Positions 31,018 to 57,280 are shown, numbered from the stretch's first letter. The stretch: DNA of 64,000 bases from Isurus oxyrinchus (GCA_026770705.1 JANJGN010000071.1:992001-1056000), one strand, 5' to 3'. The notes: generated by a model from the letters alone, not told the origin. Made by a program: numbers and translations.

Positions 31018-31157
31018 ACAGTGGAGGAGAGATTCTGCACGTGATCCTGATCCTGGGAATACGAGCTGTGATATTCCTTGTGGCTGTGGTTATCACTATC
31101 GCTGGAGTCTGTGTCTGGGAGAGACAAACAGTGAAAGGAAGTCGACAGATTGTTTGA
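31018..31157 (+). CDS. Unit D Arg-containing transmembrane/short-tail exon
   Basis: Same exon as 21992-22131, ending ...VKGSRQIV*. Confidence 0.65.
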
Positions 31158-35020: not shown

Positions 35021-35823
35021 AGGGATTGTCAACATGTATCATACGGCCAGAGACCTGTACTGGGAAGTCTATCGCCTGCGCTTCAGCTCTGAGATGAGGG
35101 GGAAGGGTCTAATCCCACGGAGCCAATGGAGAAGCTTGATGACTACAGCTGCCCAAATATGAGCTGACAGATCACACATGGTAAACGTTTTGCTGAGAGC
35201 ACAAAACATCCTCGATCTTCTCACTGATTACCCACTTCCTCATTTTGTCTCACAGTGACACATCAACCCTTTCTAATTAAACACACAGAGGGAGCAGCAC
35301 AGGAAGAGGTCATTCAGCCCAAGCAGAGCGTGTGGGCAGTTCCTCCCCAGGCGAGCAGTCGGACAGGTCCTGGGTAAGTAACGGAACGATTGGAATTCAC
35401 TTCCACCACCAACATCGTCCTTTGTTGATGTTGTGACTTTATAAAGACAGATTCCAATAATTGACGCCTTTGAAAGATTTCTACTGATTATTGAGATCTG
35501 GGTGTGAGACTCAAGTCTGTTGTACAGAACATCTTTCTAGCTCAAGGGATGAGGGAAGTGGAGAGACATGAGCTTTGGGACATCCTGAGGTGGTGAAAGG
35601 TGCTATAGAAATGCAAGTCCTTCATTGTTTTTCCTTCTTAAAGCCTTGTAACTCTCTGCAGAGCACCTATCATCCCACAGAGAATCAAACTATTCTGTGA
35701 AGACATTGTCTAAAAGCAGTTCTGATCTCTCGAGAGCTGTCGGACAAGAGGTGAGGTCTCATTAACTCCTTTCTCTTTCAGAACTTCAGAGTTAGAAGCT
35801 GAGGAAATATCTGGGAGTGGACA

Positions 35824-38800
35824 ATGATCGGGAAATCTTACTTCCTCCTGTCGCTTCTCCAAGGTAATACCATCGTCAGCTCGGACAGATTTATGGTGAA
35901 TAGTCTTTGTAAAAGATCATTCTTATTGAGCTGTGATTGGGAACTGATTCAGCAGTGAGCCAGTGTACAAACTCACACCAAGTCCCATTCACCCATCACC
36001 CCTAAACTATCTGACTCCTGGTCCTACAACATCTCAAACTTAAAATTCACATCTCTTTGTTCAAATGCATCCATTGCCTCACACTGCCTCCTTATCTCTG
36101 TAACCTCCTGCAACTCTCCCAACCAACGCCCCAGATCTCTGTGTTACTCCAATTCCGGCCTCTTGACCATCCCCCGATTCCCATCACTCCAATACTGGCG
36201 GCCGGGCCTTCAGCTGCCTGGGGCCTGAGCTCTGGAATTCACTCCCTAAACCTCGGCGATGGAGGAGATCAGAGGGTTTCATTTTACTGAAAACCACCAC
36301 GACTACATCACAGCTGCAGTGAGAATAGACAGAGAGTCCAGCCCTCGCACTTCCTGCACAGTTTCACCATAGCAACCATAATAAGGAAGTAAAATAACTG
36401 AAAGTTAAACCGAAGACAAACCAGTCAGTTTAGAGAGATGAGATGTTTACACAGTTTCCCTGTGTGTCTTGTAAACACTGTGTTGGGTGGAAGACTGGCT
36501 TCACTAAACAGGGTCCTGAGGACCATGAGCCAATGTAGAATGAAGTTGTCCACTCCTGTGTCCAGGATTCTCTTCCATCCATTATGAAACCCCTGGGGAG
36601 TTCCATGTGTGTCCTGTAGATGGTCCACACTGCAGCCAATGTGCCCCAGTGATGGAGGGGGTGGATATCGAGTCTAGTGGATCTACAAACCATCCAGAGT
36701 TAAATATTGATATTTCTCTCCCCAGTTGGACTGTCACAAGAGTGGAAAGGTGACACTCCACGAGAGGTGACAGCGCAGGAAGGTTTGTGTGTACAGATTC
36801 CATGTCATTACAGTTATCCAGCACATTTGGAAAATCAACCACGAGGTGGAGTCTGGTTTAATAATGAGAAACAGATTCCCTGGGCTCCCATAGCCTTTCA
36901 CTCCAAGGATCACAGTCGCGAGTTACCACGGTTCCGCCATCGGACCCGGCTATCTGGAGACCTGAAAGATGGCGACTGTTCCCTGATTATAAACAACATC
37001 AGACGGGAAGATGCAGGACCTTATTTTTTCAGAATAGAATTTGACAATGGTCCGGGCCATAACTATTACCCTGTAACCCAGCTTCATGTTTCTGGTAAGT
37101 GCTGTGTTATAATTACTCAACAATTCACATTCAACACTCAATGGGAATTAACACAAACTGTGATGTTTACATATTAACACAAAACACAGCTTGTTTTAAC
37201 ACATTGTCTGATTCTCAATAACCTGGTGATGGCTTCCAGTTTAGTCCTAAAGCAACATCTAATACTCACTTTAATATCAATGATGAAAAGCATTAACTGT
37301 ATTATCAGGTTATCCACTCCCATCAATCTCTCCTGTCCTGTTTAAAAGGCTGACGTATCGATAAAAGAAAGATGTGCATTTCTGCTGCGCAATTTACCAC
37401 CTCAGGAGGATCCAAATCCCTTCACAGCCAATGAAATTATTCCTGAATTGTAGTCACAGATGTTAAACACAGCAGGCAGTTTGTGCACAGCAAGATCCAA
37501 CAAACACAATGTAATAAATCACCCAGATCACTGAGGAAATGAGAAGCCAGTGAACTCAAACCTCTGGTCTGATGAAGAGTCATACGGACTCAAAACGTTA
37601 ACCCTGTCTTCCTCTCCACTGATACTGTCAGACCTGCTGAGTCTTTCCAGCAATTTTTGTTTTGGTTTCAGATTTCCAGCATCCGCAGTATTCTGCTTTT
37701 AACTCCAATCTCTGGTCTGAGCCTCTTCTCTCATCCAGTGTTCTCAATTCACATGTCTCGGAGTGAACGTGTATTAAGCTGAGAGACAGAAACACTACTG
37801 CCAAAGAGCAAGAAAATATTTCCTGATCATTGTAACCTCTCAGTTCTGATATCATCCTTGTAAAAGTGCTTTCTCTTGTGGGACTGTGATTTCTATTTGA
37901 ACTGATGCTTCACATTATATTTCTCTAAAAGGATCCATTCTCTGTCTGTTAGATTTCACAGATAAACCCATGATATTCCCTGCTGAAATTATTGCAGGAA
38001 AGCATGTGGATGTAAGCTGCACCTTCAACACAACGTGCAATGGAACAGCAGCACCTGTCTTAACCTGGGACACTCCCACTGACGTACCTGGATCAGTCTC
38101 AAACACTGTAACTCAGCATGGTGTCACTCTGACCTATACTTCTGTTCTGACCCTGATCCCATCACTCAAACACCACGGACACACTCTCAGCTGCAGAGTG
38201 AGATATCCATCTGTTTCATCGGAGCGGACCCTCGTACAAATCGTGCAAGGTAAGTACGGACACCCTTCATTCTACATCAGCACTCCCTCAGCGCTGACCC
38301 TCTGACAGTGCAGCCTGTTCTCAGTATCCATATTCTCAGGCCACTCAAAGTGCTTCACAGTCGTTAGAAGTTAACTGATCTTTAATTGATTATTGCTGAA
38401 GAAGTGACAAGCTGTTTAAACTTTACGGCTCACACACATTATTTTCCATGGCAACACCTCCTCTAATCAGAGACCACTTGCCAACCAATCAGCACTCTCT
38501 TCCCTTTAAATATAAATTGTTGTTCATTTTCTGTTGGTAAACCTGCGAGCTGTCTTGTTGAGTCCTGCCCTGACATCTCAATGTCACAATGAACAGAACA
38601 AGTTCCAACAATGAGCTGTGGTTGGTGATTCCTCATGTTACATCCAGGGACACTGGAGACTATCAGTGTGTGGCAGAGAATGAACATGGAGCAGTGGAGG
38701 TGTCCATAACCATCACTGTGGAACGTGAGTGTGCACAGACTTCAACATCACTCTCAGGTTCAAACACTACACAAATACACACAAATATACAGACCTAAGC

Positions 38801-39976
38801 AGACACCTGCAGACACACAATCCCACATGTATGAGCACACACAGAAACACACTCACAAACAAACACCCTATCACATACTGCCCTGTGGGTTACCTGACCT
38901 CCCTCAGTGCTGCACCGGAGTATTGACCTAGATTCTGGGTTTTGTGTTCCCTTTCATATTTATGGAAGAATATGGAAATTGCAAGGTCTATTACAGACAC
39001 TCAGATGCACAGGGATACTCACAGATACACTCTGCCTCTCCAACTCTCTATCCTCCTTTAAGAAGTTTCCTGAAACCTAATCCTTTGACCAGTCACCTGT
39101 CCTAACTCCTCTTACGTGATTTTGTGTGAAATTTTGTTTGAGTATCTGAGAATAAGAGGGAAGTGGAGAGGTTTAGGAAGGGAATTCCTGTTGCTGAAAA
39201 GCTTACATCAAGTTCTCAGCTTTCCAGTGCCCATTTTTCACATGATGTCCATGTTCATAATGGGGATTGCCTATGTAAACATCACGCTGTAGTTACACTC
39301 TCCCACCAGTGGTGGCACGGTAACACTTAACCCTTGCATCTCCAGCTTTTCAAGCAATTTCCCTTCCTAATTTGCTACTATTCACCTCGACCACTCCCAG
39401 TGGGAGCGAGTTCCACATTCTCCCCTCTCTCTGGGTAAAGATTGGAACTGTTTATTAAGCGGGGGGTGTAAGTCCGTGGGGGAGTCCATCTCGATTCTGC
39501 CCGATTCGCACACGCGTCCGAGATGGATTTCCACCCTGCACTAAACGTTTCCAGAATTTTCTACAGCACAATCCTGTACACAGCGATGGAGAGAAACATT
39601 GGACAGGGAGTCCAACAGCACAATGATCCATTCTCACCAATGTTCCACGCTAAGGGGAAAGTTCCGATTGTCCACTCTTAGAGTGTTTCCAATGAAAACA
39701 TTCATTCCACATTGAATCCCAGTGGATGGGTCAATATTACAGCAAATGTTGCAGTGATATGAAGCTTGATTGTTCAGCCAGAGTGAGAGATTGAAAGCGG
39801 AGAGTCAGTGATGATTTCTTTCTGTGTGTTCTCTAGACAGTGGAGGAGAGATTCTGCACGTGATCCTGATCCTGGGAATACGAGCTGTGATATTCCTTGT
39901 GGCTGTGGTTATCACTATCGCTGGAGTCTGTGTCTGGGAGAGAAAAACAGTGAAAGGAAGTCGACAGACTGTTTGA
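35824..39976 (+). CDS. Unit E: activating-type Siglec-like receptor, join(35824-35863,36726-37094,37953-38249,39837-39976), ~281 aa, V + C2 + Arg-TM
   Basis: Canonical AG/GT sites, phase-1 junctions, no internal stops. Essential Arg in PYFFRIE. TM ILILGIRAVIFLVAVVITIAGVCVW and tail ERKTVKGSRQTV* with no Tyr. Non-coding exon donor after 35373. Confidence 0.78.
36726..37094 (+). CDS. Unit E V-set Ig exon
   Basis: 369 nt, CVQIPC...DCSL...YFFRIE. Confidence 0.9.
37953..38249 (+). CDS. Unit E C2-set Ig exon
   Basis: 297 nt, AG/GTAAGT, open. Confidence 0.88.
38572..38724 (+). pseudogene. 5'-truncated copy of the third Ig (C2) exon
   Basis: HLNVTMNRTSSNNELW...DYQCVAENEHG...ITVE|GTGAGT matches the 3' half of 51229-51510. 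The first Cys, Trp and acceptor are missing. Confidence 0.8.
39837..39976 (+). CDS. Unit E Arg-containing transmembrane/short-tail exon
   Basis: Acceptor gttctctag|. Third copy of the TM exon. Confidence 0.72.
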
Positions 39977-41319
39977 AGCTTTGTGCAGCAACAATCTCAT
40001 TATGGAACAGAAGGACGGCATTCAGCCCATCGACTCCATGCTGTCTCTCTGTAGAGCAATACAGTCAGTCCCATTCCCCCGCTCTATCCCCGTATCCCTG
40101 CAAGTTTATTTCCCCTCAAGTGTCCGTCCAATTTCCGTTTGAAATCGTTCATCGTCTCCGCTTCCACCATCCTCGTAGGCAGCGAGTTCCAGCTCATTAC
40201 CACTCGCTGTGTAAAAAAGTTCCTCCTCACATCCCCCCTCTGCCCACAACCTTCAATCTGTGTCCCCCAGTCCTTGTACCATCAGCTAATGGCAACAGCT
40301 TCTCTTTGTCTGCCTTATCTAAACCCATCATCATCTTGTACACCTCGATCAGATCTCCCCTCAATCTCCTTTGCTCCAAGGAGAACAACCCCAGCTTCTC
40401 CAACCCAACCTTGTAGCTAAAATCCCTCATCCCTGGACCCATTCTGCTCAATCTCCTCCCCACCCTCTCAAGGACCCTCACTTCCTTCCCAAAGTGAGGA
40501 GACCAGAACTGGACACAATACTCTAGTTGTGACCTAACCAGAGCTTTATAAATGTTCAGCATAACCTCCCTGTGTTTGTACTCAATCCCTCAATTTATGA
40601 AAAGCTTATTCTTTCCATCAGCACAAACAACAATTTCCAAGCGGACTCCCATCAGCAGACAGAGTGCAATGAAACATCGGCATGCCTGCTTCTTAATGTA
40701 CGGAGAGAAACCTGAAACGAGAGGTTCTCCTTCTTCTCCTCAGCAAGCTGAAACTTTTCCTTATACCTGGTGCTCCCCAGTCCTGCTGTGTGGACACATC
40801 ATAACCACGGCATTGTCTGGCTGTGTGCAGCCAACATGGTCGAATAGGAATGAACAGAAATGTGACGTTGCTAAACTCTGTTCTCTGATTGGAATGTGCT
40901 TTCTGAATGCTGCACCTTTTTCATGCTGCGATAGATTGTAAGAAGCATTTGGGTTATGAATAAAATTACATTGATTAACACAAGTGATTAAAATGCTCAG
41001 CCTGTTCTGTAGATACTTATGGATTAAAATTCTTATTTTACTGCCAGATTCTTGCCTCAAAGAAAAGCTTCTTGTTGTCACATTTTCTCTATTATATAAA
41101 TTCCTGTGCCCATCCTTATAATAGAAATTTCCCATGTAAACATGTCACATTGTAGTTTCACACTCCTGCCAGTGGTGGTGCCATTCCAAAGCTGTCTTGC
41201 TGCACAGACACAGTGAGAAATATTCTCGATGTGTACATGATGTTGTTGTTACACAGACATCAGGCGGAATCTTGGGCAGTGCCTAGAATGGACTTAGGAC
41301 AGTGCAGACCACACTCAGA

Positions 41320-43500
41320 ACTGACAGTGCAGCGTTTCCTCAGTGCTGACCCTCCGTCAGTGCAGCGCTCCCTCATTACTGTCCCTCTGACAGTGCTGCA
41401 CTACCTCATTATTGACCCTTTTCAAGTGCAGCACCCCGTCATCATTGACCTTCTGACCGTGCAGGATTCCCTCATGGCTGACACTCTGACAGTGCAACAA
41501 TCCCTAAACACTGACCCTCTGATACTGTAACCCTCCATCACTAATGACTTTCCAACAGTTCAGCACTCCCTAGGTACAGACCCTCTGACAGGGCAGCATT
41601 CCCTCAGTATTCAAACTCCCACTATGCAGCTGTCCCTCAGGATTCTCCCCCCCACAGTGCAGAACTCCCTCAGTACTCACCCTCCCACAGTGCAGCACTC
41701 CCTCAGTACTCTCACTCCCACAGTGCAGTACTCCCTCAGTACTCACCCTCCCAAAGTGCAGCACTCCCTCAGTACTCACCCTCCCACAGTGCAGCACACC
41801 CTCAGTACTCACCCTCCCACAGTGCAGCACTCCATCAGTACTCACCCTCCCACAGTGCAGCACTCCCTCAGTACTCTCCCTCCCACAGTGCAGTACTCCC
41901 TCAGTACTCACCCTCCCACAGTGCAGCACTCCCTCAGTACTCTCACTCCCACAGTGCAGTACTCCCTCAGTACTCACCCTCCCAAAGTGCAGCACTCCCT
42001 CAGTACTCACCCTCCCACAGTGCAGCACACCCTCAGTACTCACCCTCCCACAGTGCAGCACTCTATCAGTACTCTCCCTCCCACAGTGCAGTACTCCCTC
42101 AGTACTCACCCTCCCACAGTGCAGCACTCCCTCAGTACTCTCACTCCCACAGTGCAGTACTCCCTCAGTACTCACCCTCCCAAAGTGCAGCACTCCCTCA
42201 GTACTCACCCTCCCACAGTGCAGCACACCCTCAGTACTCACCCTCCCACAGTGCAGCACTCCATCAGTACTCACCCTCCCACAGTGCAGCACTCCCTCAG
42301 TACTCTCCCTCCCACAGTGCAGTACTCCCTCAGTACTCACCCTCCCACAGTGCAGCACTCCCTCAGTACTCTCACTCCCACAGTGCAGTACTCCCTCAGT
42401 ACTCACCCTCCCAAAGTGCAGCACTCCCTCAGTACTCACCCTCCCACAGTGCAGCACACCCTCAGTACTCACCCTCCCACAGTGCAGCACTCTATCAGTA
42501 CTCACCCTCCCACAGTGCAGCACTCCCTCAGTACTCACCCTCCCACAGTGCAGCACACCCTCAGTACTCACCCTCCCACAGTGCTGTGCGAGTTATTTAA
42601 ATCAAGACTGGTGCCCAAAGAGCGAGGTTTCAATGCTAAATCATTGAACTCGGTGAAAATTATTTTTAGGCTGAGGGGAACAAGACTTAGTTCCTCATAT
42701 CCTTTCTTTAGCAATAACACACAGTACTAGAATCTCTGTTTAAATAAATTCCAGTTAAACTTTGCCATGAAAGGATATCTTCTCACACTCCTCTCTACCT
42801 CAGTAGTAACCCTCCCACAGTCCGGCACCCCCTCAATACTGACCCTCCGACTGTGCGGAACTCACTCAGTACAGACCTGCTGACAGTTCAGCACTCCCTC
42901 ATTACTGATCCTCTGACAGTGCAGCACTCCCTCATTAAGGACCCTCTTCCAGTGCAGTACTCCCACATTACTGTCCCTCTGACAGTGCAGCACTCCCACA
43001 TTACTGACCCTCTGACAGTGCAGCACTCCCACATTACTGTCCCTCTGACAGTGCAGCACTCCCTCAGTACTGACCCTCCGACATTGCAGCATTCCTTCAC
43101 TACTGGCCCTCTGACAGTGCAGCACTCTCACATTACTGACCCTCTAATAGTGCAGCAGACCCTCAGTACTGACCCCACCAACAGTGCAGCACTCGCTCAG
43201 TACTGACCCTCCCACAGTGCAGCACTCCCTCAGTACTACACTCCTGACAGTGAAGTACTCCCTTATTAATGACCCTCTTCCAGTGAAGAACTCCCACATT
43301 ACTGTCCCTCTGACAGTGCAGCACTCCCTCAGTACTGACCCTGCGACATTGCAGCAATCCTTCACTACTGGCCCTCTGACAGTGCAGCAATCCCACATTA
43401 CTGACCTTCTGATAGTGCAGCACTCACTCAGTACTGACCCTCACACAGTGCAGCACTCCCTCAGTACTATACCCCTGACAGTGCAGCACTCCTTCAGTAA
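41320..43500. repeat. Two 33-bp minisatellite arrays (paralog of 32500-35020)
   Basis: Tandem units with the same spacer (42590-42800) as 33670-33880. Confidence 0.92.
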
Positions 43501-44310
43501 TGATATCAGGGATTGTCAACATGTATCATACGGCCAGAGACCTGTATTGGGAACTCTATCGCCTGCGCTTCAGCCTCTGAGATGAGGGGGAGGGGTCTAA
43601 TCCCACGGAGCCAATGGAGAAGCTTGATGACTACAGCTGCCCAAATATGAGCTGACAGTTCACACATGGTAAACGTTTTGCTGAGAGCACAAAACATCCT
43701 CAATCTTCTCACTGATTACCCACTTCTTCATTTTGTCTCACAGAGACACATCCACCCTTTCTAATTAAATACACAGAGGGAGCAGCACAGGACGAGGTCA
43801 TTCAGCCCAAGCAGAGCGTGTGGGCAGTTCCTCCCCAGGCGAGCAGTCGGACAGGTCCTGGGTAAGTAACGGAACGATTGGAATTCACTTCCACCACCAA
43901 CACCGTCCTTTGTTGATGTTGTGACTTTATAAAGACAGATTCCAATGATTGATGCCTTTGAAAGATTTCTACTGATTATTGAGATCTGGGTGTGCGCTCA
44001 AGTCTGTTGTACAGAACATCTTTCTAGCTCAAGGGATGAGGGAAGAGCAGAGACAAGAGATTTGGGACATCCTGAGGTGGTGAAAGGTTCTATGGAAATG
44101 CAAGTCCTTCATTGTTTTTCCTTCTTAAAGCCTTGTAACTCTCTGCAGAGCACCTCTCATCCCACAGAGAATCAAACTATTCTGTGAAGACATTGTCTAA
44201 AAGCAGTTCTGATCTCTCGAGAGCTGTCGGACAAGAGGTGAGGTCTTATTAACTCCTTTCTCTTTCAGAACTTCAGAGTTAGAAGCTGAGGAAATATCTG
44301 GGAGTGGACA

Positions 44311-47300: not shown

Positions 47301-50300
47301 TGTGATGGAGAATTCCACAGATTGACCACCCTCTGAGTGAAGAAATGTTTCCCTATCTCAGTCCAAAATGGCCTGCCCTGTATCCTGAGATTGTCGCCCT
47401 TGGTTTTAGACTCCCCAACCAAGGGATGCATCCTCCCTCCATCCAGTCTGTCTATCTCTGTTAGAATTTCTTACGTTTATTCAGGTCTCCTCTCATTCTT
47501 CTAAACTCTAGTGAATACAGACCCAGTCGTACCAATTCTCCTCATACGACAGTCCTGCCGCCCCTGGTATCAGCCTAGAGAACCTTCTCTGCGCTCTCTC
47601 GACGGCAAGTCTATCCTTTTTTAGGGAGGGAGACCAAAACGGCACGTAGTACCCCATGTGCAGTCTCACCAAGACCTTGTATAACTGCAGTGAGACATCC
47701 CTACTCCTGAACACAAATCCTCTTGCAATGAAGGCCAACATACCATTTGCCTTCCGAATTACTTGCTGCACCTGCCTGTTTACTTTCATTGGCTAGTGCA
47801 CAAGGACACCCAGATCCCTTTGTACATCCACATTTCGCAATATATCACCATTTAAATAATACTCTGCCTTTCTGTTTTTCACACCAAAGCCTACAATGTC
47901 ACATTCATCCACATCATCTGCCATGTGTTTGCCCACACACACAACTTGTCTAAATCGCCTTGAAGCCTCTTTGCATCCTCCTCACAGCTCACACCCTTAC
48001 CCAGCGTTGTGTCATCAGAAAACCTGGAAATATTGCACTTGGCTCCCTCACCCAAGTCATTTATATATATCATGAATAGTTAGGTCCCAAGCACGGATCC
48101 CTGTGGTATACCACTAGTCACCGCCTGCCACTCAGATAAAGACTAATTTATTCTGACCCTCTGTTTCCTGTCTATCGACCAATTCTCAATCCATGCCAGT
48201 AAATTACCCGCAATCCCATGGGCTTTAATGTTGCGCACTAGCCTCATGTAGGACCTTATCAAAAGCCTTCTTGAAGTCTAAATACACCACATCCACTGGT
48301 TATCCCTTATCTATTCTACTCGTTACATCTTCAAAATCTCCAATAGATTAGTTAACCATGATTTTCCTTTCATTAACCCATGCTGATTTTGTCGAATCCC
48401 ATTAAAGCTTTCCAAGCGTTCCATTAGCACACCTTATATAATAGGCTCTAGCATTTTCCCCATGACTGATGTTAGACTAACTGGTCTGTAATTCTCTGAT
48501 TTTTCTCTCCCTTTTATTTTAAATAGTGGAGTTACAATTGCCACTCTCCAATCTATAGGAACTGCTCCAGAGCCTATAGAATTTTGGAGGATGACCACCA
48601 GTGCTTCCAATATTTCCAGGGTCACTTCCGTTAGTCTCTGGGATGTAGATTTTCAGGCCCTGGGGACTGTTCAACCTTTAACCCATTAATCTCTCCAGAT
48701 TCATTTTTTAAAACTAATCCTGATTATCTTCAATTCCTCCCTCTCACTAGACACTTGGTTCCCTAACATTCCTGGGAAATTATTTGTGTCCTCTTTTGTG
48801 AAGACAGAACCAAAATATATGTTCAGTTCTTCTGCCATTTCTTTGTTTCTCATTAGAATTTCCCCCCTTTCTGACTGCAAGGAACCTACATCGGTCACTG
48901 CTAATCTTTCTCTCTTCACATATTTATAGAAGCTTTTACAGTCGGTTTTTACGTTCCCTGCAAGTTTACTCCCATGTTCCATTTTCCCCTTCTTGATCAA
49001 TCTTTTTGTCCACTTTTGCTGAATTCTAAACTGCTCCCAATCCTCAGCATTGCTGCTTCCCCTGGCAATTTTATGTCTCCTCTCTGGATCTAATACTATC
49101 CCTAATTTCTTTTGTAAGCCCTGGTTGAGCACCATTTCCTGACTTATTTTTACACCAGACAGAAATGGATAATTGTTGTAGCAAATGCTTCAGCCTTATC
49201 TTTTGCCCTGATGTGCTGGGCTCCCCCTTCATTGAGGATGGGGATATTTGTGGATTCCCCTCCTCCAGTGAGCTAATTGTCCATTACCATTGGATACGAG
49301 CATTAGTGGACTGTGTTAGACCATTATCGAAAATGAAAGCCAGACTCCAGTATGGCCTAACTATGATGGATATGACAACTCGATTTCCAGAGGCCATCCC
49401 TTTCGGAACAATTACAGCTAAAGTAGTAATAGGGAAGTTAACCCAATTTTTTATCCATTATGGATTACCGCTGGAGATCCAGTCAGTTCAAGGTTCCATC
49501 TCTATGTCTTAAAATTTTCCGAACATAATGAGTAATTTGGGTATAAAACAGTTAAAGTCCGTAGTATATCATCCATAGACACGGGGATCTTTAGAGAGGG
49601 ACCAACAAACACTCAAAACAATGATTGAAGCTATTGTCATGAACTCCCCATGACTGGGACAAAGGACTGGATTTTCTTGTATTTCCCACACGAGATTCAC
49701 CAACTGAATCGGCAGGTTTTAGTCTTTTTGGATTAATTTATGGACATGAGATAAGAGGCTGTCTGAAATTCATCAAAGAAAGATATTCCGGACAGAGGGA
49801 TGAATCCTCTATTTCAGATGATGTGTCTGTGTTTCAGGAAAGGCTCATGGGAGCCTCCAAAGTGGCACAAGAACATCTTATAGTTTCTCAAACAGAGATG
49901 AAGGAATGGGGCAGACAGGAAAGCTGTGACCCGAACATCACAACCAGGGGGATGACGTGTTAGTATCATTGCCTTGGCAGGGGGAGCCTCTGAAAGCGCG
50001 GTTCAGTGGTCCCTACAAGGTAATTAGGAGGGTTGGTCAAGTAAATTATTTGATAGACACCCCAGATTGTAGAATAAAGAATCAGCTGTGATACATCAAT
50101 ATGTTAAAACGATACTATCGTAGGGAGGGAGGTCAAAAGGAGCAGGTATTTCATTTCCAACCAGATTCTGCATAGATTACAGAAAGGTTAATGCAGCAAT
50201 AAAACCAGATTCCTACCCAATCCCCTGTTTAGAAGATGGTATTGACGAGGTTGGCAGTGCCATGTTCCTTACTGAGGTAAATTTGTTGGTAGGGGGGTGT

Positions 50301-53300
50301 GTTCATGACCATCAGTGTGGAAGGGTTAGGTTTACAGGTTACACAGACCACACACACAACAACACACACACACACACACACACGCACACACACACACGTA
50401 AGCACGCACACGCACACACACACACAGCACACATNNNNNNNNNNNNNNNNNNNNNNNNNNNNNNNNNNNNNNNNNNNNNNNNNNNNNNNNNNNNNNNNNN
50501 NNNNNNNNNNNNNNNNNNNNNNNNNNNNNNNNNNNNNNNNNNNNNNNNNNNNNNNNNNNNNNNNNNNNNNNNNNNNNNNNNNNNNNNNNNNNNNNNNNNN
50601 NNNNNNNNNNNNNNNNNNNNNNNNNNNNNNNNNNNNNNNNNNNNNNNNNNNNNNNNNNNNNNNNNNNNNNNNNNNNNNNNNNNNNNNNNNNNNNNNNNNN
50701 NNNNNNNNNNNNNNNNNNNNNNNNNNNNNNNNNNNNNNNNNNNNNNNNNNNNNNNNNNNNNNNNNNNNNNNNNNNNNNNNNNNNNNNNNNNNNNNNNNNN
50801 NNNNNNNNNNNNNNCTCTCAGTGCTGCACTGGAGTCTCGGTGTCAGCTCCGATTCTGTGTTGAAGGAAGGTAAACTCCAAATCAACAAGACCCTGAATTG
50901 GATGAGCAACCTCCTGAACAGAGAATTGTAGATTTACCCCTCAGTGCTCCATCGATCAAATATAATTCATTGCCTGTCAAGCCCTTGGGGACATTCTGAG
51001 AATGTGAAAGGGAGTTTCTTTAAATCTGGATGGGCAGGGTCTCTGGTGGGAGAATGCTCCTGCAGTGTGACAGTTTACATAGGCAGTGCACATTGTAAAT
51101 GTGACATAGGAACTTATCTTGAGGGAAGGTGCCTAGAAATGCACACAGGCATCAGTTACAGCGAGATGATACAGGAAGTTTTGCTGTGCACTGTGTTTGT
51201 TCACATTAAAATCTTTATATATTTTTAGATGGACCACAGAATCTCTCAATTACTTCTCTTGATATGATTAACGCTTCATCGGTCAATATAATTGAGGGGA
51301 ATTCTGCAGTGATAATCTGCTCTGTCGAGAGCTTCCCAGCTTCTAACCTGACGTGGCGACATCTTAATGTCCCAATGAACAGAACAAGTTCCAACAATGA
51401 GCTGTGGTTGGTGATTCCTCACGTTACATCCAGGGACACTGGAGACTATCAGTGTGTGGCAGAGAATGAACATGGAGCAGTGGAGGGGTTCATAACCATC
51501 ACTGTGGAATGTGAGTGTGGAGATACATTTGTTTGTTTGTTGTCTCCGTGGTCTCCGTGGAGCCATTGGGATCGTGTTGTTTTTAATCCAGTTTTCTTCA
51601 ATCCTCGCTCAGTCCACGTTATCCACACATCCAATTTTTCCTCTCCCTTTCTGTTTTTGCTCTCAGTTTCTCCTTCAATGGTTGTGAGGACAAGGCTGTC
51701 AGGTCTTCGTTTCCAATCTCCGTACTTGACGACCTTTCTCTCTCTAACTGTCCTGAACAACCCTTTTAATTGCTGAACGTCTCCTCTTGATCTAAGCCAC
51801 TCATTGGTCTTTCTGTCCATCCAGCTGATTCTGAGCATCTGGCAGCATCTGTGGAGAGAAAGACAGGGTTAGCGTTTGGAGTCCGTAAGACTCCTCTTCA
51901 GAGCTAAAGGGAAGTAGACATGTGGTGAAATATATCCTGTCTAAGGCGGGGCGATGGGACAGGTGGAGCTGGATAGAAAACCAGCGATAGGTGGAGGCAA
52001 TGGAGAGATTGTGGAAGATGTCATAAACAAAAGGTCAAAGGGTTGTTAACAGTGGTGGTATTGGATAAAGGAGGTGCTAATGGTGACATTAAGCAGAGTG
52101 TGATAATGGGCGGACCAGGGTAAGCACTCTGGACAGAGACAGATGGCCCTCGTGGGGGTGTGGAGGGGGGAGGGGACGGTGGAGGGAATAAAGATCGAAA
52201 ATAGACTAAAATCTGCGGATAAAACAATCAATAAAAATGGAAATGAATTTCAAATAATAATAATAAAAATAAGTGGAAAACAGTCAACAAATAAAACAAT
52301 TAAAATGAATACATAAAAAAGGGTTCAAAAAGCAGTGAAGATCGAGGAGAGAGTTCATGATCTGAAAGTGTTGAACTCAATATTCAGTCGGGAAGGCTGT
52401 AAAGTGCCAGGTTGGAAGATGAGGTGCTGTTCCTCCAGTTTGCTTTGAGCTTCACTGGAACAATGCAGCAGGCCAAGGACGGACATGTGGGCATGAGAGC
52501 AGGGTGGGGTGTTAAAATGGCAAGCAACAGGGAGGTCTGGGTCGTTCTTGCAGACAGACTGAAGGTGTTTCGAAAAGTGGTCACCCAGTCTGTGTTTGGT
52601 GTCTCCAATGTAGAGGAAACCGCACTGGGAGCAGTGAATGCAGTAGATTAAATTGAAGGAAGTCTGCATGAAGCGCTGCTTCACCTGGAAGGAGTGTTTG
52701 GGTCATTGGACAGTGAGGGGGGAGGAAGTAAAGGGGCAGGTGTTGCACCTTCTGCAAATGCATGGGAAGATGTCATCGGAGAGGGTTGAGGTGCTAGGGG
52801 TGATGGAGGAGTGGACCAGGGTGTCCTGGAGGGAATGATCCCTGTGGAATCCCAACAGGGTGGGGGTGAAGGGAAGATGCTTTTGATGGTGGTCAGATTT
52901 TGTCCGAAGGAGGTGATAAATGTGGGAGGGAATTCCAGAGGTTAGGATCCAGGCAGCTGAAGGCACGGCCGCCAATGGTGGAGCGATAGGAATCGGGGGA
53001 ATGTCAAGAGGCTGGAATTGGAGGTGCACAGAGATCTCAGAGGGTTGTAGAGGCTGGAGGAGTTTACAGAGATAAGGAAGGTTGTGGGGGCTGGAGGAGT
53101 TTACAGAGATAAGGAAGGTTGTAGGAGCTGGAGGAGTTTACAGAGATAAGGAAGGTTGTAGGGGCTGGAGGAGGTTACTGAGATAGGGAGGGTTGAACGG
53201 GCTGGAGGAGGTTACAGAGATAGGGAGGGTTGAAGGGGCTGGAGGAGGTTACAGAGATAGGGAGGGTTGAAGGGTCTGGAGGAGGTAACAGAGATAGGGA

Positions 53301-56300
53301 GGGGGTAAGGAGGGATTTGAAACGATGTTAATTTTAAAATTGTGGCATTGTCGGACCGGGAGCCAGTGTAGCTCAGTGACCAACAGGGAGTGATGTGTGA
53401 ACGGGATTTGGTGTGAGTTAGGACATGGGGACAGCAGAGTTTGGGTTGAGCTGATGTTTACAGAGAGTGGAAGATGGGAGGTCGGGCAGGAGAGTGTTGG
53501 GATAGTTGAGTGCGGAGGTAACAAAGGCAGGAATGAGTGTTTCAGTGTTAAGATTCTATCTTACGCTCTAACTTTGCTATGACGTTGTCTCATTGTTGTC
53601 CTTCCCTCCTCAGATAAGCCGGAGATTTCCCAGCAGTCGGAGTGCACTCGGAGATCAGAGGGGGTCACCTGCGTCTGTGTGGCCAACTCCAACCCACCCG
53701 GAAACCTCACCTGGCACCTGCCCAGTGCCAACATCAGTGGTAACCAAACACACGGAGGTTTTGTGTCGTGGCAGGTCAGAGATGGGCATCTGGTGACTGG
53801 TTCCCTCACCCTGATGAGACCCCAGGATGAGGGGGGAGTGATTGCATCCTGCTCGGTTCAAAACCCACACGGGGAAGCCATGTTCAAGGTTTATCTGTGG
53901 GTCAAAGGTGAGAGACTCGCTCAGGATCGATCTCCACTCAGCTGGATTGATCCCTAAACTCGAGAATTCCCTCCCTCAACCTCTCCACCTCTCTCTCTAC
54001 CTCCTCTAAGATGCTGTGTACAACTTACCCCTTTGACCAAGCTTTGAATCACCTGACCTCATGTGACAATGGCAACACTTGGTCAACTTGGAGCCAGGCC
54101 GTTCAGGGGGTGATGTCAGGAAACACTTCTTCACACAAAGGGGAGTGGAAATCTGGAACCCTCTCCCCCAGATAAGCTGCTTCATTGGGTGCAAGACAGA
54201 AAGCTTTGACAAAATGTCCTTTCTCAGCAATACTCAGGTTCTCCTCCCAAACGACTAAATATTATATATAAACATTACATAGATTACATCGAGAAACATT
54301 ATATATAAATGTTACATAGATTACATCGAGAAATATTATATATAAATGTTACATAGATTAAATGGATAAATATATATAAATGTTACATATATTACATTGA
54401 TAAATATTATATATAAATGTTACATGGATTATATTGAAAAATATATATAAATGTTATAGATTACATTGAGAAAAATTAAATATAAATGTTACACAGATTA
54501 AATGGATAAATATTAGATATAAATGTTACATATATTACATTGATAAATATAATATATAAATGTTACATGGATTAAATCGAGAAACATTATATATAAATAT
54601 TACAGAAATTAAATGGATAAAAATTATATATAAATGTTACATAGATTATATTGATAAATATTATAAATTTATGCTATAGGGATCACATTGATAAATATTA
54701 TATATAAATGTTACATGGATTAAATCGAAATATAAGACTTGCGTTGATAAAATACTTAGGAATTCCCAAAACGCTCGATAACCAGTGAAGCAGTTTCAAA
54801 GTGAGCTCACTGTCATCATGTAAGAAACGCAACAGCTGATTTGTGCACAGCAAGATCCCACAAACAACAGCGTGAAATTGAGGTGATAATTGATTATTTT
54901 AGGGAGGGTAGTTGATACATAAAAATAGAAATTACATATATAATATGGGTCACTAATTATCTTAAGGGAGGGAAACCTGTCCATTTTAACAGGTCTGGGT
55001 GTATATGTGACTCCAGTCTCAAACACCAACATGGTTAACTCTTACCTGCCCTCTGAACTGGTCTCCCAGTTTGGGACAAACCAGTGGTTCAGGAGGAAGA
55101 CCCCCCACCACCTTCTCAAGGGGAAACTAGGGATGGACAATAAATGTCAGCATTGCCCGAGAATGAGTATTTAAACACTGAGTGAGTGTATCGCTTCTCG
55201 AGATACATCGGAGCATCATTGTAAACCTGTAGTGCAGTAATTAATGGCTGTTTTTACAGGTAGAGACTCCAGTAAAGGGACAGTAGGATTGTTCACGGCT
55301 GGGATCATGTTGAGTGTTTTCCTGGCTGGAATCTTCATCTTCATCTGTGTGAGAAAGTAAGTCTGAAGATTTAACTTGATTTTAATATAAACATTTGCTT
55401 CAATGTTCTTTCCTTAAGTCGGTGATTGTTTCCCTTGGGATCAGCACCAGTTCCCTCTCCGTAAGTGATCCCTGTGTCCACTGTGATCCGGAGAGAACCT
55501 TTCATTGTCCTGTATCCAGGTAAACAATCACGAGACCCAGAGATTCCTCACTCTGCACGATTACTCCTGGATAAACATTTGCTTCAATGTTCTTTCCTGA
55601 AGTCGGTGATTGTTTCCCTTGTGTTAAGCGCCAGATGCCTCTCCCTAACTGGTCTCTTTGTCCCTTACGATCCAGAGAGAGTTTTTCATTGCCCGTTATC
55701 CAGATGAATAATAATCAGTTGCTGTGATCTGGAAGGCGCTGCCTGAAAGGGCGCTGGAAGCAGATTTAATAGGATCTTTCAAAAGGGGAATTGGATAAAT
55801 ACTTGAAGGGGGAACATTTGAAGGGCTATGGGGGGAAGAGCAGGGGTGGAGGGGGGGTCAAAGATATGGCGTGTCATTATAATGATATTATACCTTAGGC
55901 TTATTTACTGTACAAGAAACAAAGCACCAATCGCTCACAGGGTTTGGGTGAGAATGTTTCGGTTTGTTTATCAGGACTCGGCACGAGAACAGTTATACAT
56001 ACGGAGAAAGATTGAAGGCATCAGAGCTGTGAGTGTGTGTTCTGCTCAAAGCAAAAGTCAAACTAAGATTGGATCACATGACACACTTCCATTATAGTGA
56101 TGTCACGCTGATATCCCTTATTGGAACTAGAGACAGTCCAGTTGTTGGTGTAAGGTTACACTGGGCTCTGTGTCTGTGCTGCACTGACTCTCTGCTATAT
56201 GATAACCACAGTGTGATATTGTGTTATTGCAGGAGAAAGACAGCGATGGAGGAGAGAGTTTCAGGGACCAGTGACATTGCATTGACCCCCAGGTCACTCT

Positions 56301-57280
56301 CTGTGAAGCACCAGGTACAGGAGCTGTTTACACTCACTTCAAAGCTTCAATCAACAGACAACACGTATACCAGATTCTCAGCCGGGTTACACATAGATAT
56401 CTCCCTGTGAAGCAATGGCTCAGTGGACAGCACTGTCTCTCGCTCCCAGCCTCTGTCACCCTCCATCACTCGCTCTTTGACCAGAAACCTGAACACAATA
56501 ATGACAAGGCACCTGATGTCAGTAGTGAGGGAGTGCTGCCCTGTCAGAGGGTCAGTACTGAGGGAGTGCTGCACTGTCAGAGGGTCAGTACTGAGGGATT
56601 GCTGCACTGTCAGAGGGTCAGTACTGAGTGATTGCTGCACTGTCAGAGGGTCAGTACTGAGGGAGTGCTGCACTGTCAGAGGGTCAGTATTGAGGGAGTG
56701 CTGCACTGTCAGAGGGTCATTACTGAGGGAGTGCTGGACTGTCAGAGGGTCAGTACTGAGGGAGTGCTGCACTGTCAGAGGGTCAGTATTGAGGGAGTGC
56801 TGCACTGTCAGAGGGTCAGTACTGAGGGAGTGCTGCACTGTTGGAGTGTGATAGAGATTAAATTATACAGAGAGAGAGAAAGCGAGAGAGAAAGAGAGAC
56901 AGAGAAAGAGAGGGAAAAAAAGGCTTAAACCCACTGAGACACGACTGACACTAACGAGGCTGCACAATAATTTAACCCTATCAGTGCCAATAAATGATGT
57001 GAGGATGTCTTCTGTTTCCATTTCTCTGTAGGATGAACAGAACGTGCTGATTACTGAGCCCCGGGAAACAACCAGAGACACAACTAGTGAGGGGGAGACC
57101 CCAGCTCCCCGGGATCTCTCTGAAGGTCCAGTGGGAGGTGATGTTGGACATGGGAACCCCGACAATACCGACGAGCTTCTCTACGCCAACATCAACTTTT
57201 CAAAGCTGCCCAGCGGTGACAGGACGGTGCACAGGAGCGAGGACACGGAATACGCACAGATCAGGTTCCAGAAAAACTGA
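44311..57280 (+). CDS. Unit F: inhibitory CD33-related/MAG-like Siglec-like receptor, join(44311-44350,45213-45581,46440-46736,51229-51510,53614-53907,55260-55356,56233-56314,57032-57280), ~569 aa if the mutated donor after 46736 were functional
   Basis: All exons are open and phase-compatible: V + three C2, neutral TM, ITIM LLYANI and TEYAQI. Caveats are the ATAAGT donor at 46737 and an assembly gap inside the intron after the first C2 exon. Confidence 0.75.
45213..45581 (+). CDS. Unit F V-set Ig exon
   Basis: 369 nt, essential Arg intact, 4 aa different from the unit E V exon. Confidence 0.9.
46440..46736 (+). CDS. Unit F first C2-set exon (donor mutated GT>AT)
   Basis: 297 nt followed by ATAAGT. 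Read-through gives ...VQDKY* ending at 46747. Confidence 0.82.
47100..49190 (-). mobile_element. Degenerate CR1 LINE ORF2
   Basis: KSFYKYVKRER, VPIDWRVAIVTPLFK..NYRPVSLTSV, IYINDL..FSDDT and KANGMLAFIARG motifs. Confidence 0.9.
49250..50310 (+). mobile_element. Gypsy integrase/RT remnant
   Basis: VDCVRPL...MMDMTTRFPEAIP..TITAK...GLPLEIQS.QG integrase core, with a yrkvna..kpdsypip RT fragment near 50180. Confidence 0.75.
50435..50814. other. Assembly gap (further gaps at 61188-61431, 62357-62679, 63764-63906)
   Basis: Runs of N, several flanked by CA/TG microsatellites. Confidence 0.99.
51229..51510 (+). CDS. Unit F second C2-set exon
   Basis: 282 nt, ttttag|...|GTGAGT. GPQNLSI...EGNSAVIICSVESFPASNLTW...DTGDYQCVAENEHG. 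Confidence 0.9.
51530..51838 (-). mobile_element. RTE-like LINE 3' fragment
   Basis: MLRISWMDRKTNE...IEGETESKNRKG resembles the RTE ORF C-terminus. Confidence 0.6.
51835..52920 (-). mobile_element. Penelope-like element (GIY-YIG remnant)
   Basis: NLIYCIHCSQCGFLYIGDTKHRLGDHF...PVACHFN motif. Confidence 0.88.
53614..53907 (+). CDS. Unit F membrane-proximal C2-set exon (C..CxC type)
   Basis: 294 nt. YKPEISQQSECTRRSEGVTCVCVANSNPPGNLTW...SCSVQNPHG, like the membrane-proximal domain of MAG and Siglec-5/10-type proteins. Confidence 0.88.
54255..54730. repeat. AT-rich ~40-bp minisatellite
   Basis: tatataaatgttacatagattacattgataaatat tandem units. Confidence 0.85.
55260..55356 (+). CDS. Unit F transmembrane exon (uncharged)
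   Basis: 97 nt, phase 1-2, ttttacag|...|GTAAGT. GRDSSKGTVGLFTAGIMLSVFLAGIFIFICVRK. Confidence 0.88.
56233..56314 (+). CDS. Unit F first cytoplasmic exon
   Basis: 82 nt, phase 2-0, ttgcag|...CAG|GTACAG. RKTAMEERVSGTSDIALTPRSLSVKHQ. Confidence 0.75.
56510..56845. repeat. 33-bp minisatellite
   Basis: Tandem units. Confidence 0.9.
57032..57280 (+). CDS. Unit F terminal exon with ITIM and ITSM-like motifs
   Basis: ctctgtag|GAT... DELLYANINFSK...EDTEYAQIRFQKN*. Confidence 0.9.
   Translation, partial: DEQNVLITEPRETTRDTTSEGETPAPRDLSEGPVGGDVGHGNPDNTDELLYANINFSKLPSGDRTVHRSEDTEYAQIRFQKN

What the first reader, a model, noticed from the sequence alone, without database searches (positions are those of the whole stretch)
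35230..57280. Paired activating/inhibitory Siglec-like receptors with near-identical ligand-binding halves in a probable cartilaginous fish
Seen: units E and F share promoter, leader, V exon (4 aa differences), first C2 exon (2 aa differences at its end) and both introns almost base for base, then diverge right after the C2 exon. E ends in an Arg-TM exon with a short Tyr-free tail. F ends in a neutral TM with ITIM (LLYANI) and TEYAQI motifs. Established: primate Siglec-5/14 and Siglec-11/16 are such pairs, kept alike by gene conversion, and Siglec-14 uses a TM Arg to recruit DAP12. Inference: this is an independently evolved or very ancient paired-Siglec system outside mammals.
Basis: partly seen in the sequence, partly recalled or inferred. 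Interest (0 to 1): 0.9.

Follow-up and report, generated by a model that had tools for sequence, protein, structure and literature searches.

The report
Shark activating/inhibitory Siglec-like gene pair
Two neighbouring shark genes encode Siglec-type immune sensors with almost the same sugar-binding head. One is wired like an accelerator (arginine in the membrane anchor) and one like a brake (ITIM tail), and a single recent 8.7-kb tandem duplication, not ongoing gene conversion, best explains their likeness.

Summary
E (35013-38281) and F (43500-46768) share 3272 bp at 97.0% identity: leader, V exon (4 aa differences), first C2 exon (2 aa differences) and both introns. E then uses an Arg-containing TM exon with a 12-residue Tyr-free tail. 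F continues with two more C2 exons, a neutral TM and an LLYANI/TEYAQI tail.

The V domain is Siglec-type by sequence, Pfam and fold, and keeps the sialic-acid arginine.

New points:
- The Arg-TM cassette upstream of E's head (30557-32477) matches E's own cassette (39376-41295) at 96.9%. One tandem duplication of [Arg-TM cassette + 33-bp minisatellite + head] therefore explains the pair, and E is its junction product.
- F's C2a splice donor reads ATAAGT, so F may be splice-dead in this assembly.
- The N gap lies inside F's intron 3. Exon phases stay in frame across it, but F's head-to-tail link rests on that scaffold join.
- RNA contigs show leader>V, V>C2a and C2a>Arg-TM (38249>39837) joints. 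They carry non-E letters and probably come from related species or paralogues.

The Arg-TM exon is conserved in three shark orders. NCBI's automatic annotation already labels such genes, and I found no paper on them. This scan reported similar shark Siglec pairs on other pieces of this genome.

The parts
30557..32477 (+). Arg-TM cassette of unit D (copy 1 of the duplicated super-unit). The Arg-TM exon lies at about 31018-31157.
   Evidence: It is 96.9% identical over 1921 bp to 39376-41295. tblastn with E's TM exon gives 96%.
32505..35016 (.). 33-bp minisatellite array (about 76 units) upstream of E
   Evidence: Tandem Repeats Finder.
35013..38281 (+). E head block, shared with F. It holds the leader exon, V exon, C2a exon and two introns.
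   Evidence: 97.0% over 3272 bp to 43500-46768.
35781..35863 (+). E leader exon. The ATG is at 35824, the peptide is MIGKSYFLLSLLQ, the donor is GTAATA and the exon ends in phase 1.
   Evidence: Alignment of the six leader copies. An RNA joint 35863>36726 is seen in X7, and X5 has a loose end that reads the start of the V exon.
36726..37094 (+). E V-set (Siglec-type) exon with YFFRIE arginine and the C..PC / DCSL cysteines
   Evidence: The RNA joint 37094>37953 is seen in all four runs.
37953..38249 (+). E first C2-set exon (C2a), donor GTAAGT
   Evidence: Pfam C2-set_2. PDB hits are MAG and CD33 domain 2. Donor alignment.
38282..39375 (+). Duplication junction in E. It starts with one 33-mer minisatellite unit (about 38279-38315) and holds a 5'-truncated relic of exon C2b at 38572-38716.
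   Evidence: No match elsewhere in the window except 38572-38733 = 51358-51519 at 96.3%. Sequence read, 33-mer consensus.
39376..41295 (+). Arg-TM cassette of E (copy 2). The Arg-TM exon is 39837-39976 including the stop, and AATAAA lies at 40959-40964.
   Evidence: The RNA joint 38249>39837 (GT..AG) is seen in X1, X5 and X6.
41323..43503 (.). 33-bp minisatellite array (about 66 units) upstream of F
43500..46768 (+). F head block: leader 44311-44350, V 45213-45581, C2a 46440-46736
46737..46742 (+). F C2a splice donor reads ATAAGT (+1 G>A). Read-through adds DKY and then a stop.
   Evidence: Four-way alignment; open frame.
49129..50088 (+). Retroelement integrase remnants in F intron 3, next to the gap
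   Evidence: Open frames. Pfam SH3_Tf2-1 and Integrase_p58_C match below their cut-offs.
50435..50814 (.). Assembly gap (N) inside F intron 3. It was not filled.
   Evidence: The flanking exon phases are both 1.
51229..51510 (+). F second C2/I-set exon (C2b)
   Evidence: Pfam Ig_3 and I-set. Splice sites. RNA loose ends at 38572 read F's upstream C2b letters exactly.
53614..53907 (+). F third C2 exon (C2c)
55260..55356 (+). F neutral TM exon (GRDSSKGTVGLFTAGIMLSVFLAGIFIFICVRK)
56233..56314 (+). F cytoplasmic exon 1
57032..57280 (+). F cytoplasmic exon 2 with ITIM LLYANI, ITSM-like TEYAQI and the stop

Best explanation
**What it is.** The window holds a tandem cluster of shark Siglec-like genes.
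- E encodes leader-V-C2-TM(Arg) with a 12-residue tail. This is an activating-type receptor that should need an acidic-TM ITAM adaptor.
- F encodes leader-V-C2-C2-C2-TM-ITIM/ITSM, an inhibitory-type receptor.

**Why the heads are alike.** A segment of about 8.7 kb, [Arg-TM cassette + 33-bp minisatellite array + promoter/leader/V/C2a], was duplicated in tandem about 3% divergence ago.
- The second copy of the head kept the old inhibitory 3' half. That gene is F.
- The first copy of the head now lies upstream of the second copy of the Arg-TM cassette and splices to it. That gene is E.
- So an activating partner was made from an inhibitory gene's head and a resident Arg-TM cassette in one step.

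**Shown.** The DNA anatomy, intact reading frames and splice sites, Siglec-type V fold and arginine, use of the C2a>Arg-TM junction in related RNA, and conservation of the cassette.

**Inferred.** Sialic-acid binding, adaptor coupling, opposite signalling, and which copy is ancestral.
For: - **Equal divergence of all parts of the super-unit.** 30557-32477 = 39376-41295 at 96.9%. 35013-38281 = 43500-46768 at 97.0%. The C2b relic matches at 96.3%. The two offsets differ by 332 bp, about ten 33-mers of array length.
- **Even spread of differences.** E/F differences number 2-12 per 200 bp, and exons (2.4%) differ about as much as non-exons (3.2%).
- **Constraint on the heads.** pN/pS between the two heads is 0.21, with 6.5 non-synonymous and 9.5 synonymous changes; binomial P is 0.001-0.005. 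The heads have therefore been under purifying selection since the duplication.
- **Intact gene parts.** All E exons and splice sites are intact. All F exons are intact and in frame.
- **Siglec identity of the V domain.** PDB phmmer hits to Siglec-5, -7, -8 and CD33 have E 1e-16 to 1e-14, with YFFRIE aligned to Siglec-5 YFFRVE. Pfam V-set and Ig_CD22 score above their cut-offs. The model has pLDDT 77.6, and its top roughly 45 Foldseek hits are all Siglec V domains with TM 0.78-0.84.
- **RNA joints.** GT..AG joints 35863>36726, 37094>37953 and 38249>39837 appear in contigs.
- **Conserved cassette.** The Arg-TM exon is 80-93% identical in proteins of Carcharodon, two Scyliorhinus species and Chiloscyllium, including V-C2-ArgTM proteins of 270-273 aa.
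Against: - F's C2a donor is ATAAGT, so the inhibitory member may be non-functional here.
- F's head and tail are joined across an unverified assembly gap.
- RNA contigs carry the family-consensus letter at E-private sites 36786, 37055 and 39944, and at 38004. The runs hold only about 0.4 of the 31-mers. They probably come from related species or paralogues, so expression of this E copy is not shown.
- The last 49 bp of the block are 20% diverged. A simple duplication does not explain this.
- The C2b relic means the junction was reworked after the duplication, or the event was complex.
- No adaptor has been identified. A 2014 survey found no FcR-gamma homologue in sharks (PMC4016189).
Confidence: 0.7

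Rival explanations
1. **Old pair kept alike by gene conversion.** E and F are an old activating/inhibitory pair, and recurrent gene conversion limited to the ligand-binding part keeps their heads alike, as in primate Siglec-5/14.
For: - Sequence exchange is real at family level. The C2a exon with about 100 bp on each side is 97-100% identical in units A, C, E and F, while intron 2 cannot be aligned and V is a mosaic of patches at 65-97% identity.
- A 367-bp run without any E/F difference covers C2a (P = 0.0006).
- V domains group by species, not by tail type. E+F are sisters, S. canicula P0158+P0159 are sisters, and the AU test rejects one clade of Arg-TM V domains (p = 0.0045).
- The block ends in a locally diverged 49 bp, as a conversion-tract edge might.
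Against: - The likeness is not limited to the head. The Arg-TM cassettes upstream of each array show the same 3% divergence.
- Introns are as alike as exons.
- Apart from C2a, there is no alternation of identical and diverged tracts.
- The groups for the AU test were named after the tree had been seen.
Confidence: 0.15
2. **No working pair in this genome.** F is a splice-dead pseudogene (or yields only a secreted V-C2 product), and/or E is an unexpressed by-product of a rearrangement in a decaying array.
For: - F's donor has the +1 G>A change. Read-through hits a stop after 3 codons.
- Neighbouring units are decayed. B's leader has a 1-nt deletion. C's leader has an 8-nt deletion, its donor is CT and its C2a has a frameshift. 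B and D lack Ig exons.
- The RNA contigs do not carry E's private letters.
Against: - Every other exon and splice site of E and F is intact.
- pN/pS of 0.21 argues for constraint over most of the time since duplication.
- C2b contigs differ from E's relic by as many letters as F does (3 over 38572-38700; only 38636 is listed), and their upstream loose ends read F's exon exactly.
- The E-type architecture is annotated in white shark and catsharks.
- The donor change could be a polymorphism or a base-call error.
Confidence: 0.3
3. **Assembly artefact.** The E/F likeness comes from two haplotypes, or a mis-joined repeat, laid in tandem.
For: The region is rich in minisatellites, and F spans an N gap.
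Against: - Divergence of 3% with 6 indels over 3.3 kb, and quite different downstream content, is far from allelic.
- The same super-unit structure includes D's cassette.
- Comparable pairs exist in independent assemblies of other sharks.
Confidence: 0.03

Closest known systems
Primate Siglec-5 / Siglec-14 (and Siglec-11 / Siglec-16) paired receptors
   Same: - Adjacent genes with near-identical V and first C2 domains.
- One member has an ITIM plus a membrane-distal ITIM-like or ITSM-like motif.
- The other member has an arginine in the TM and a short tail (the paired-receptor concept is described in PMC4042635 and PMC13358205).
   Different: - The origin must be independent, because the primate pairs are young and the shark Arg-TM cassette is shared by three shark orders.
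- One tandem duplication explains the likeness here, rather than recurrent conversion.
- The inhibitory member has 4 Ig domains and the activating member has 2.
- The adaptor is unknown.
- No binding or signalling data exist.
Mammalian CD33-related Siglecs
   Same: - V-set domain with the F-strand arginine.
- C2 domains and one-domain-per-exon phase-1 structure.
- A TM exon followed by two cytoplasmic exons.
- Tail motifs LLYANI and TEYAQI, which resemble the CD33-type LxYASL and TEYSE[IV] motifs (that resemblance is from my own knowledge).
   Different: - Orthology was not tested, because no reference sequences could be brought into a tree.
- MAG scores almost as well as the CD33 group (53 against 59-64 bits).
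- Teleosts are reported to lack CD33-related Siglecs (PMC7226832).
Automatically annotated shark and ray 'Siglec-12/13/14', 'CD33-like' and 'MAG-like' proteins (NCBI models, e.g. XP_041037190.1 in white shark, Siglec-14 isoform X2 in S. canicula)
   Same: - Same family, with V domains 82-94% identical.
- Same Arg-TM exon.
- Same ITIM tail.
   Different: These are unpublished pipeline predictions. This window adds the genomic mechanism and a probably damaged inhibitory copy.
Other paired Ig receptors (PILR alpha/beta, KIR, LILR)
   Same: The same logic: a shared ectodomain joined either to an ITIM tail or to a charged TM with an adaptor.
   Different: Different Ig families. PILR reaches only E about 2e-3 against the V exon.

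Membership tests
Siglec (I-type sialic-acid lectin) | N-terminal V-set Ig domain of Siglec type | tested here: met
   - The top 17 PDB sequence hits are all Siglecs, with E 9e-17 to 4e-12.
- Pfam V-set scores 45 bits and Ig_CD22 34 bits, both above their cut-offs.
- The top roughly 45 Foldseek hits are all Siglec V domains, with TM 0.78-0.84.
Siglec (I-type sialic-acid lectin) | Conserved F-strand arginine that binds the sialic-acid carboxylate | tested here: met
   YFFRIE in E and F aligns with YFFRVE of Siglec-5. The Arg column is nearly invariant in alignment A3.
Siglec (I-type sialic-acid lectin) | Siglec cysteine pattern: a B-E intrasheet pair, plus an extra Cys in V and in domain 2 for an interdomain disulfide | tested here: inconclusive
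   The sequence shows C..PC and DCSL in V, and three Cys in C2a. The V-C2 pair was not modelled, because the joined model was left out.
Siglec (I-type sialic-acid lectin) | Binds sialylated glycans | not testable with these tools
   Needs a glycan array or a cell-binding assay.
CD33-related Siglec subgroup | Orthology or monophyly with mammalian CD33rSiglecs, to the exclusion of MAG, CD22, Siglec-1 and Siglec-15 | not tested
   Only bit-score order is available: Siglec-5/7/8/CD33 > MAG > sialoadhesin >> Siglec-15, CD22. No reference sequences could be used in a tree.
CD33-related Siglec subgroup | Cytoplasmic ITIM plus a membrane-distal ITIM-like motif | tested here: met
   F's last exon carries LLYANI, then 21 residues, then TEYAQI.
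Paired activating/inhibitory receptors (Siglec-5/14 type) | Linked genes with near-identical ligand-binding domains | tested here: met
   The genes lie 8.5 kb apart. V differs at 4 of 122 residues and C2a at 2 of 98.
Paired activating/inhibitory receptors (Siglec-5/14 type) | One member has an ITIM tail; the other has a basic TM residue and a short tail | tested here: met
Paired activating/inhibitory receptors (Siglec-5/14 type) | Both members are expressed as the predicted spliced mRNAs | tested here: inconclusive
   - The C2a>Arg-TM joint is seen in 3 runs, but with non-E letters.
- F-type C2b is transcribed.
- F's C2a>C2b joint could not be examined.
- F's donor is ATAAGT.
Paired activating/inhibitory receptors (Siglec-5/14 type) | The activating member associates with an ITAM adaptor through the TM charge | not testable with these tools
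   No shark adaptor sequence was in hand. Needs co-immunoprecipitation with and without the R>A change.
Paired activating/inhibitory receptors (Siglec-5/14 type) | Likeness maintained by recurrent gene conversion | tested here: not met
   For E/F, one duplication suffices, because the cassette, head and relic show equal divergence. Family-wide exchange is seen only around C2a and in V patches.

The most novel reading that the evidence does not exclude
Shark Siglec clusters are built as exchangeable cassettes. A head (leader-V-C2a) ends in a C2a exon kept 97-100% identical in all units. An ancient Arg-TM cassette (more than three shark orders) has a fixed left edge, and 33-bp minisatellite arrays mark the unit borders. 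Unequal exchange at these landmarks repeatedly re-pairs one binding head with activating and inhibitory ends. Paired Siglec signalling would then be an old, actively regenerated feature of jawed-vertebrate immunity rather than a mammalian novelty, and CD33-type tails would predate the split from bony vertebrates.
Probability: 0.3. Interest if true: 0.7.

Novelty: new member of a known kind. Interest (0 to 1): 0.55.

Why it matters
- **Reach of the paired-receptor design.** Papers describe paired activating/inhibitory Siglecs for mammals, and teleosts are reported to lack CD33-related Siglecs (PMC7226832). A CD33-type, multi-gene Siglec family with activating and inhibitory partners in sharks pushes this design back to the base of jawed vertebrates, or shows that it arises repeatedly.
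- **How a partner is made.** This window shows one concrete route: a single tandem duplication puts a copy of an inhibitory gene's head in front of a resident Arg-TM cassette.
- **An open question that becomes testable.** The adaptor that a shark Arg-TM receptor uses is unknown.
- **A parallel to human null alleles.** The donor-site lesion in F, if real, would resemble the human null alleles of paired Siglecs.

Tried and rejected
- **The repeat finder.** The 33-bp minisatellite swamped the output. I replaced it with BLAST self-comparison.
- **First TM-exon translation.** It was in the wrong frame and was redone.
- **F's TM exon.** My first guess (56.1 kb) was wrong. That stretch is intron plus cytoplasmic exon 1, and the TM exon is 55260-55356.
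- **The look-up of encoding contigs.** Gene neighbourhoods in white shark and catshark could not be fetched, so linkage of their Arg-TM and ITIM genes rests only on equal contig lengths.
- **The search for homologous proteins with P0008.** It returned no protein marked as encoded by this window.
- **GENECONV.** It is not installed. I used difference counts per window, a longest-identical-run simulation and four-way sliding identity instead.
- **V-domain tree with mammalian Siglecs.** Not built, because PDB hits are not usable as sequences and I did not type sequences from memory.
- **Joined (spliced) models.** The E and F proteins were never searched or folded. All searches and the fold were done exon by exon, by reference. 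Only codon counts were summed over two exons in a script.
- **PMC3015071 (Cao and Crocker).** Not held.
- **Haplotype-duplication artefact.** Considered and rejected on divergence and structure.
- **U12-type splicing of ATAAGT.** Rejected. It does not fit the AT-AC consensus (my own knowledge), and the intron ends in AG.
- **The N gap.** It was neither filled nor looked up.

Full report
**1. Observation**

A BLAST comparison of the two units gives one colinear block, 35013-38281 against 43500-46768. It is 3272 bp long, 97.0% identical, with 92 mismatches and 6 gaps. The translated V exons differ at 4 of 122 residues. The first C2 exons differ at 2 of 98, both near the end (LVQIVQ against LVLTVQ).

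Gene models, read from the sequence and from homologous proteins:

| Exon | E | F |
|---|---|---|
| Leader | 35781-35863 (ATG at 35824) | 44311-44350 |
| V | 36726-37094 | 45213-45581 |
| C2a | 37953-38249 | 46440-46736 |
| C2b | truncated relic at 38572-38716 | 51229-51510 |
| C2c | none | 53614-53907 |
| TM | Arg-TM 39837-39976, including the stop | neutral TM 55260-55356 |
| Cytoplasmic | none; the 12-residue tail is in the TM exon | 56233-56314 and 57032-57280 |

- All Ig exons are phase 1/1.
- E's TM reads ...ILGIRAVIF... and its tail is 12 residues without tyrosine.
- F's last exon carries LLYANI and TEYAQI.

**2. The assembly gap (tested first, as asked)**

- The N run 50435-50814 lies in F's intron 3. 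It is 3.7 kb after the C2a exon and 414 bp before the C2b exon, next to remnants of a retroelement integrase.
- C2a ends in phase 1 and C2b starts in phase 1, so the reading frame is continuous whatever the gap's true length.
- The order C2a>C2b is the one found in homologous shark proteins (P0005, P0007, P0160). E's own C2b relic also lies downstream of its C2a.
- Physical continuity cannot be verified here, so the link between F's head and its inhibitory tail rests on a scaffold join.

**3. Corrections to the observation**

- *Where the divergence starts.* The high-identity block does not end cleanly after the exon. Its last 49 bp (38233-38281), which cover the exon's last 17 bp and the donor, hold 10 differences (P about 2e-6 at the 3% background).
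- *A second E/F match.* E and F match again at 38572-38733 = 51358-51519 (96.3%). This is the 3' half of F's C2b exon, so E holds a 5'-truncated relic of it.
- *F's donor.* F's C2a donor reads ATAAGT where E, A and C read GTAAGT. Read-through adds DKY and a stop. In this assembly F should therefore not make the inhibitory receptor, unless the base is an error or a polymorphism.

**4. Family identity**

- *Sequence.* E's V exon finds only Siglecs at the top of the solved-structure list. Siglec-5, -7, -8, CD33 and Siglec-10 score E 9e-17 to 2e-14, and MAG and sialoadhesin follow. YFFRIE aligns with Siglec-5's YFFRVE, the sialic-acid arginine.
- *Pfam.* V-set and Ig_CD22 score above their cut-offs for the V exons, and C2-set_2 for C2a. 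C2a's best solved relatives include domain 2 of MAG and CD33.
- *Fold.* A model of the V exon (pLDDT 77.6) has Siglec V domains as all of its first roughly 45 fold matches (TM 0.78-0.84).
- *Relatives.* A library-wide HMMER search finds 284 proteins at E<=1e-10. The closest relatives found come from sharks, rays and a sawfish. NCBI's pipeline names them Siglec-5/7/8/10/12/13/14, CD33-like or MAG-like.
- *Species.* E's V domain is 94% identical to a white-shark Arg-TM protein. The window is probably from a lamniform shark, and earlier notes of this scan also call this genome a shark.

**5. Why E and F are alike**

The likeness is not limited to the head. The Arg-TM cassette upstream of E's minisatellite (unit D, 30557-32477) matches E's own cassette (39376-41295) at 96.9% over 1921 bp.

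So [cassette | 33-bp array | head] occurs twice in tandem:
- copy 1: 30557-38281
- copy 2: 39376-46768

Evidence that this was a single event:
- All parts show the same roughly 3% divergence.
- The two offsets (8819 and 8487 bp) differ by 332 bp, about ten array units.
- Differences are spread evenly, and exons (2.4%) differ about as much as non-exons (3.2%).

One tandem duplication, or one unequal crossover, explains this. Recurrent conversion of the ligand-binding part is not needed.

The junction (38282-39375) starts with one copy of the 33-mer and holds the C2b relic. The event therefore either reached past C2b and was later trimmed, or was complex.

Under a simple tandem duplication, F (copy-2 head plus the old 3' half) is the original inhibitory gene. 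E (copy-1 head plus copy-2 Arg-TM cassette) is the new chimera. This polarity is inferred.

pN/pS between the two heads is 0.21 (6.5 non-synonymous and 9.5 synonymous changes; binomial P 0.001-0.005). The heads have therefore been constrained since the event.

**6. Sequence exchange in the wider family**

- *A shared C2a block.* The window holds further units, and in four of them (A, C, E, F) the C2a exon plus about 100 bp on each side is 97-100% identical. Intron 2 cannot be aligned, and V is a mosaic of patches at 65-97% identity. A 367-bp run without any E/F difference covers C2a (P = 0.0006).
- *The V-domain tree.* E and F are sisters (99/62). The S. canicula Arg-TM protein P0158 and ITIM protein P0159 are sisters (95/85) and are 87% alike over leader-V-C2. 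An AU test rejects a single clade of Arg-TM V domains (p = 0.0045). The groups were named after I had seen the tree, which weakens this test.
- *Old tails, reshuffled heads.* The Arg-TM exon is 80-93% identical in Carcharodon, Scyliorhinus canicula, S. torazame and Chiloscyllium punctatum. So tails are old, and heads are re-paired or homogenised within lineages.
- *Tail types.* At least three tail types occur in the family: Arg-TM, LLYANI/TEYAQI, and a ...YANC...YGNV type.

**7. Expression**

- *Joints seen.* Contigs of four public runs were laid on 35700-40200. They show GT..AG joints at 35863>36726 (X7, plus a loose end in X5), 37094>37953 (all four runs) and 38249>39837 (X1, X5, X6).
- *C2b is transcribed.* Contigs over the C2b relic differ from E by as many letters as F does (3 over 38572-38700; only 38636 is listed). 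Their upstream loose ends read F's exon exactly (51337-51357). So a complete F-type C2b exon is transcribed.
- *Whose transcripts these are.* The contigs carry the family-consensus letter at E's private sites (36786, 37055, 39944) and at 38004. The runs hold only about 0.4 of the stretch's 31-mers, which corresponds to roughly 3% divergence. They are probably from related species (coded organisms A and B) or from paralogues.
- *What this shows.* The E-type splice pattern is used in sharks. It does not show that this copy of E is expressed.

**8. Mechanism (inferred from established knowledge of paired receptors)**

- E should reach the surface and signal only with an acidic-TM ITAM adaptor that docks on the TM arginine.
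- F should recruit SH2 phosphatases through phospho-LLYANI and phospho-TEYAQI.
- With heads that differ at 6 residues, both should see much the same sialylated ligands.
- Which adaptor sharks use is open. A 2014 survey found no FcR-gamma homologue in shark data (PMC4016189).

**9. Comparison and novelty**

- The closest known systems are primate Siglec-5/14 and Siglec-11/16 (PMC4042635, PMC13358205).
- Teleosts are reported to have only Siglec-1, CD22, MAG and Siglec-15, and to lack CD33-related Siglecs (PMC7226832).
- My paper searches found nothing on shark Siglec pairs, although pipeline annotation already predicts such proteins.
- This scan has reported similar shark Siglec pairs on at least eight other pieces of the same genome. 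I treated those notes as leads only.
- What this window adds: the duplication super-unit that creates the activating member, the shared C2a block, the minisatellite landmarks, and the donor lesion in F.

**10. Limits**

All searches were done exon by exon, by reference.
- No tree with mammalian Siglecs could be built.
- No DNA reads of the source individual were examined.

Noticed in passing
window 19293-23553 (unit B) and 29400-32477 (unit D): Two further units have promoter, leader exon and Arg-TM cassette but no V or C2 exons. B's leader has a 1-nt deletion. D's leader and donor are intact, and leader>Arg-TM splicing would be in frame, giving a peptide of about 59 aa with no ectodomain. They are probably decayed units, and no RNA joint was seen.
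   Followed up: partly
window 24486-28652 (unit C): A V + C2a unit with a dead leader (8-nt deletion after the ATG, donor GT>CT) and a frameshift in C2a. It is a pseudogene head, followed by a minisatellite (28836-29309) and then unit D.
   Followed up: partly
window 8291-11650, minus strand (unit A): A head-to-head Siglec-like unit with an intact leader, V (9957-9592, 82% aa identity to E) and C2a (8662-8372). None of the tail exons searched for was found downstream of it within the window.
   Followed up: partly
window 35281-35375, 43769-43858, 19110-19214, 19847-19978, 11459-11367 (minus); also 15887-16003: - Right after each minisatellite, inside what looks like the promoter block, lies a relic of a cytoplasmic exon of the third tail type (...STGRGHSAQAERVGSS...).
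- An orphan terminal exon of that tail (...YANC...YGNV type) lies at 15887-16003 on the plus strand.
- This suggests the duplicated block once included the 3' end of an upstream gene.
   Followed up: partly
window 32505-35016, 41323-43503, 11730-12376, 19293-19573, 23553-24282, 28836-29309, 56518-56841 (inverted), single unit at about 38279-38315: - A 33-bp minisatellite marks every unit border.
- One unit sits exactly at E's rearrangement breakpoint.
- An inverted array lies in F's intron between the two cytoplasmic exons.
- The motif is extremely abundant in RNA contigs (summed depth up to 8e4), so it is a genome-wide transcribed repeat.
   Followed up: partly
window 40819-40987 vs 57306-57477: The 3' region of the Arg-TM cassette shares an 81.5% identical stretch with F's 3' UTR. 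A plus-strand AATAAA at 40959 is conserved in all three cassettes (also at 23205 and 32140).
   Followed up: partly
window 53040-53303, 3572-3930, 26042-26365, 616-869: A 37-bp G-rich tandem repeat recurs in several introns and spacers of the cluster.
   Followed up: no
window 61188-61431, 62357-62679, 63764-63906: Three more N gaps lie in an AT-rich, repeat-rich stretch at the window's end. The low-complexity DNA left of the gap in F (50343-50433) resembles DNA beside the gap at 61.4 kb.
   Followed up: no
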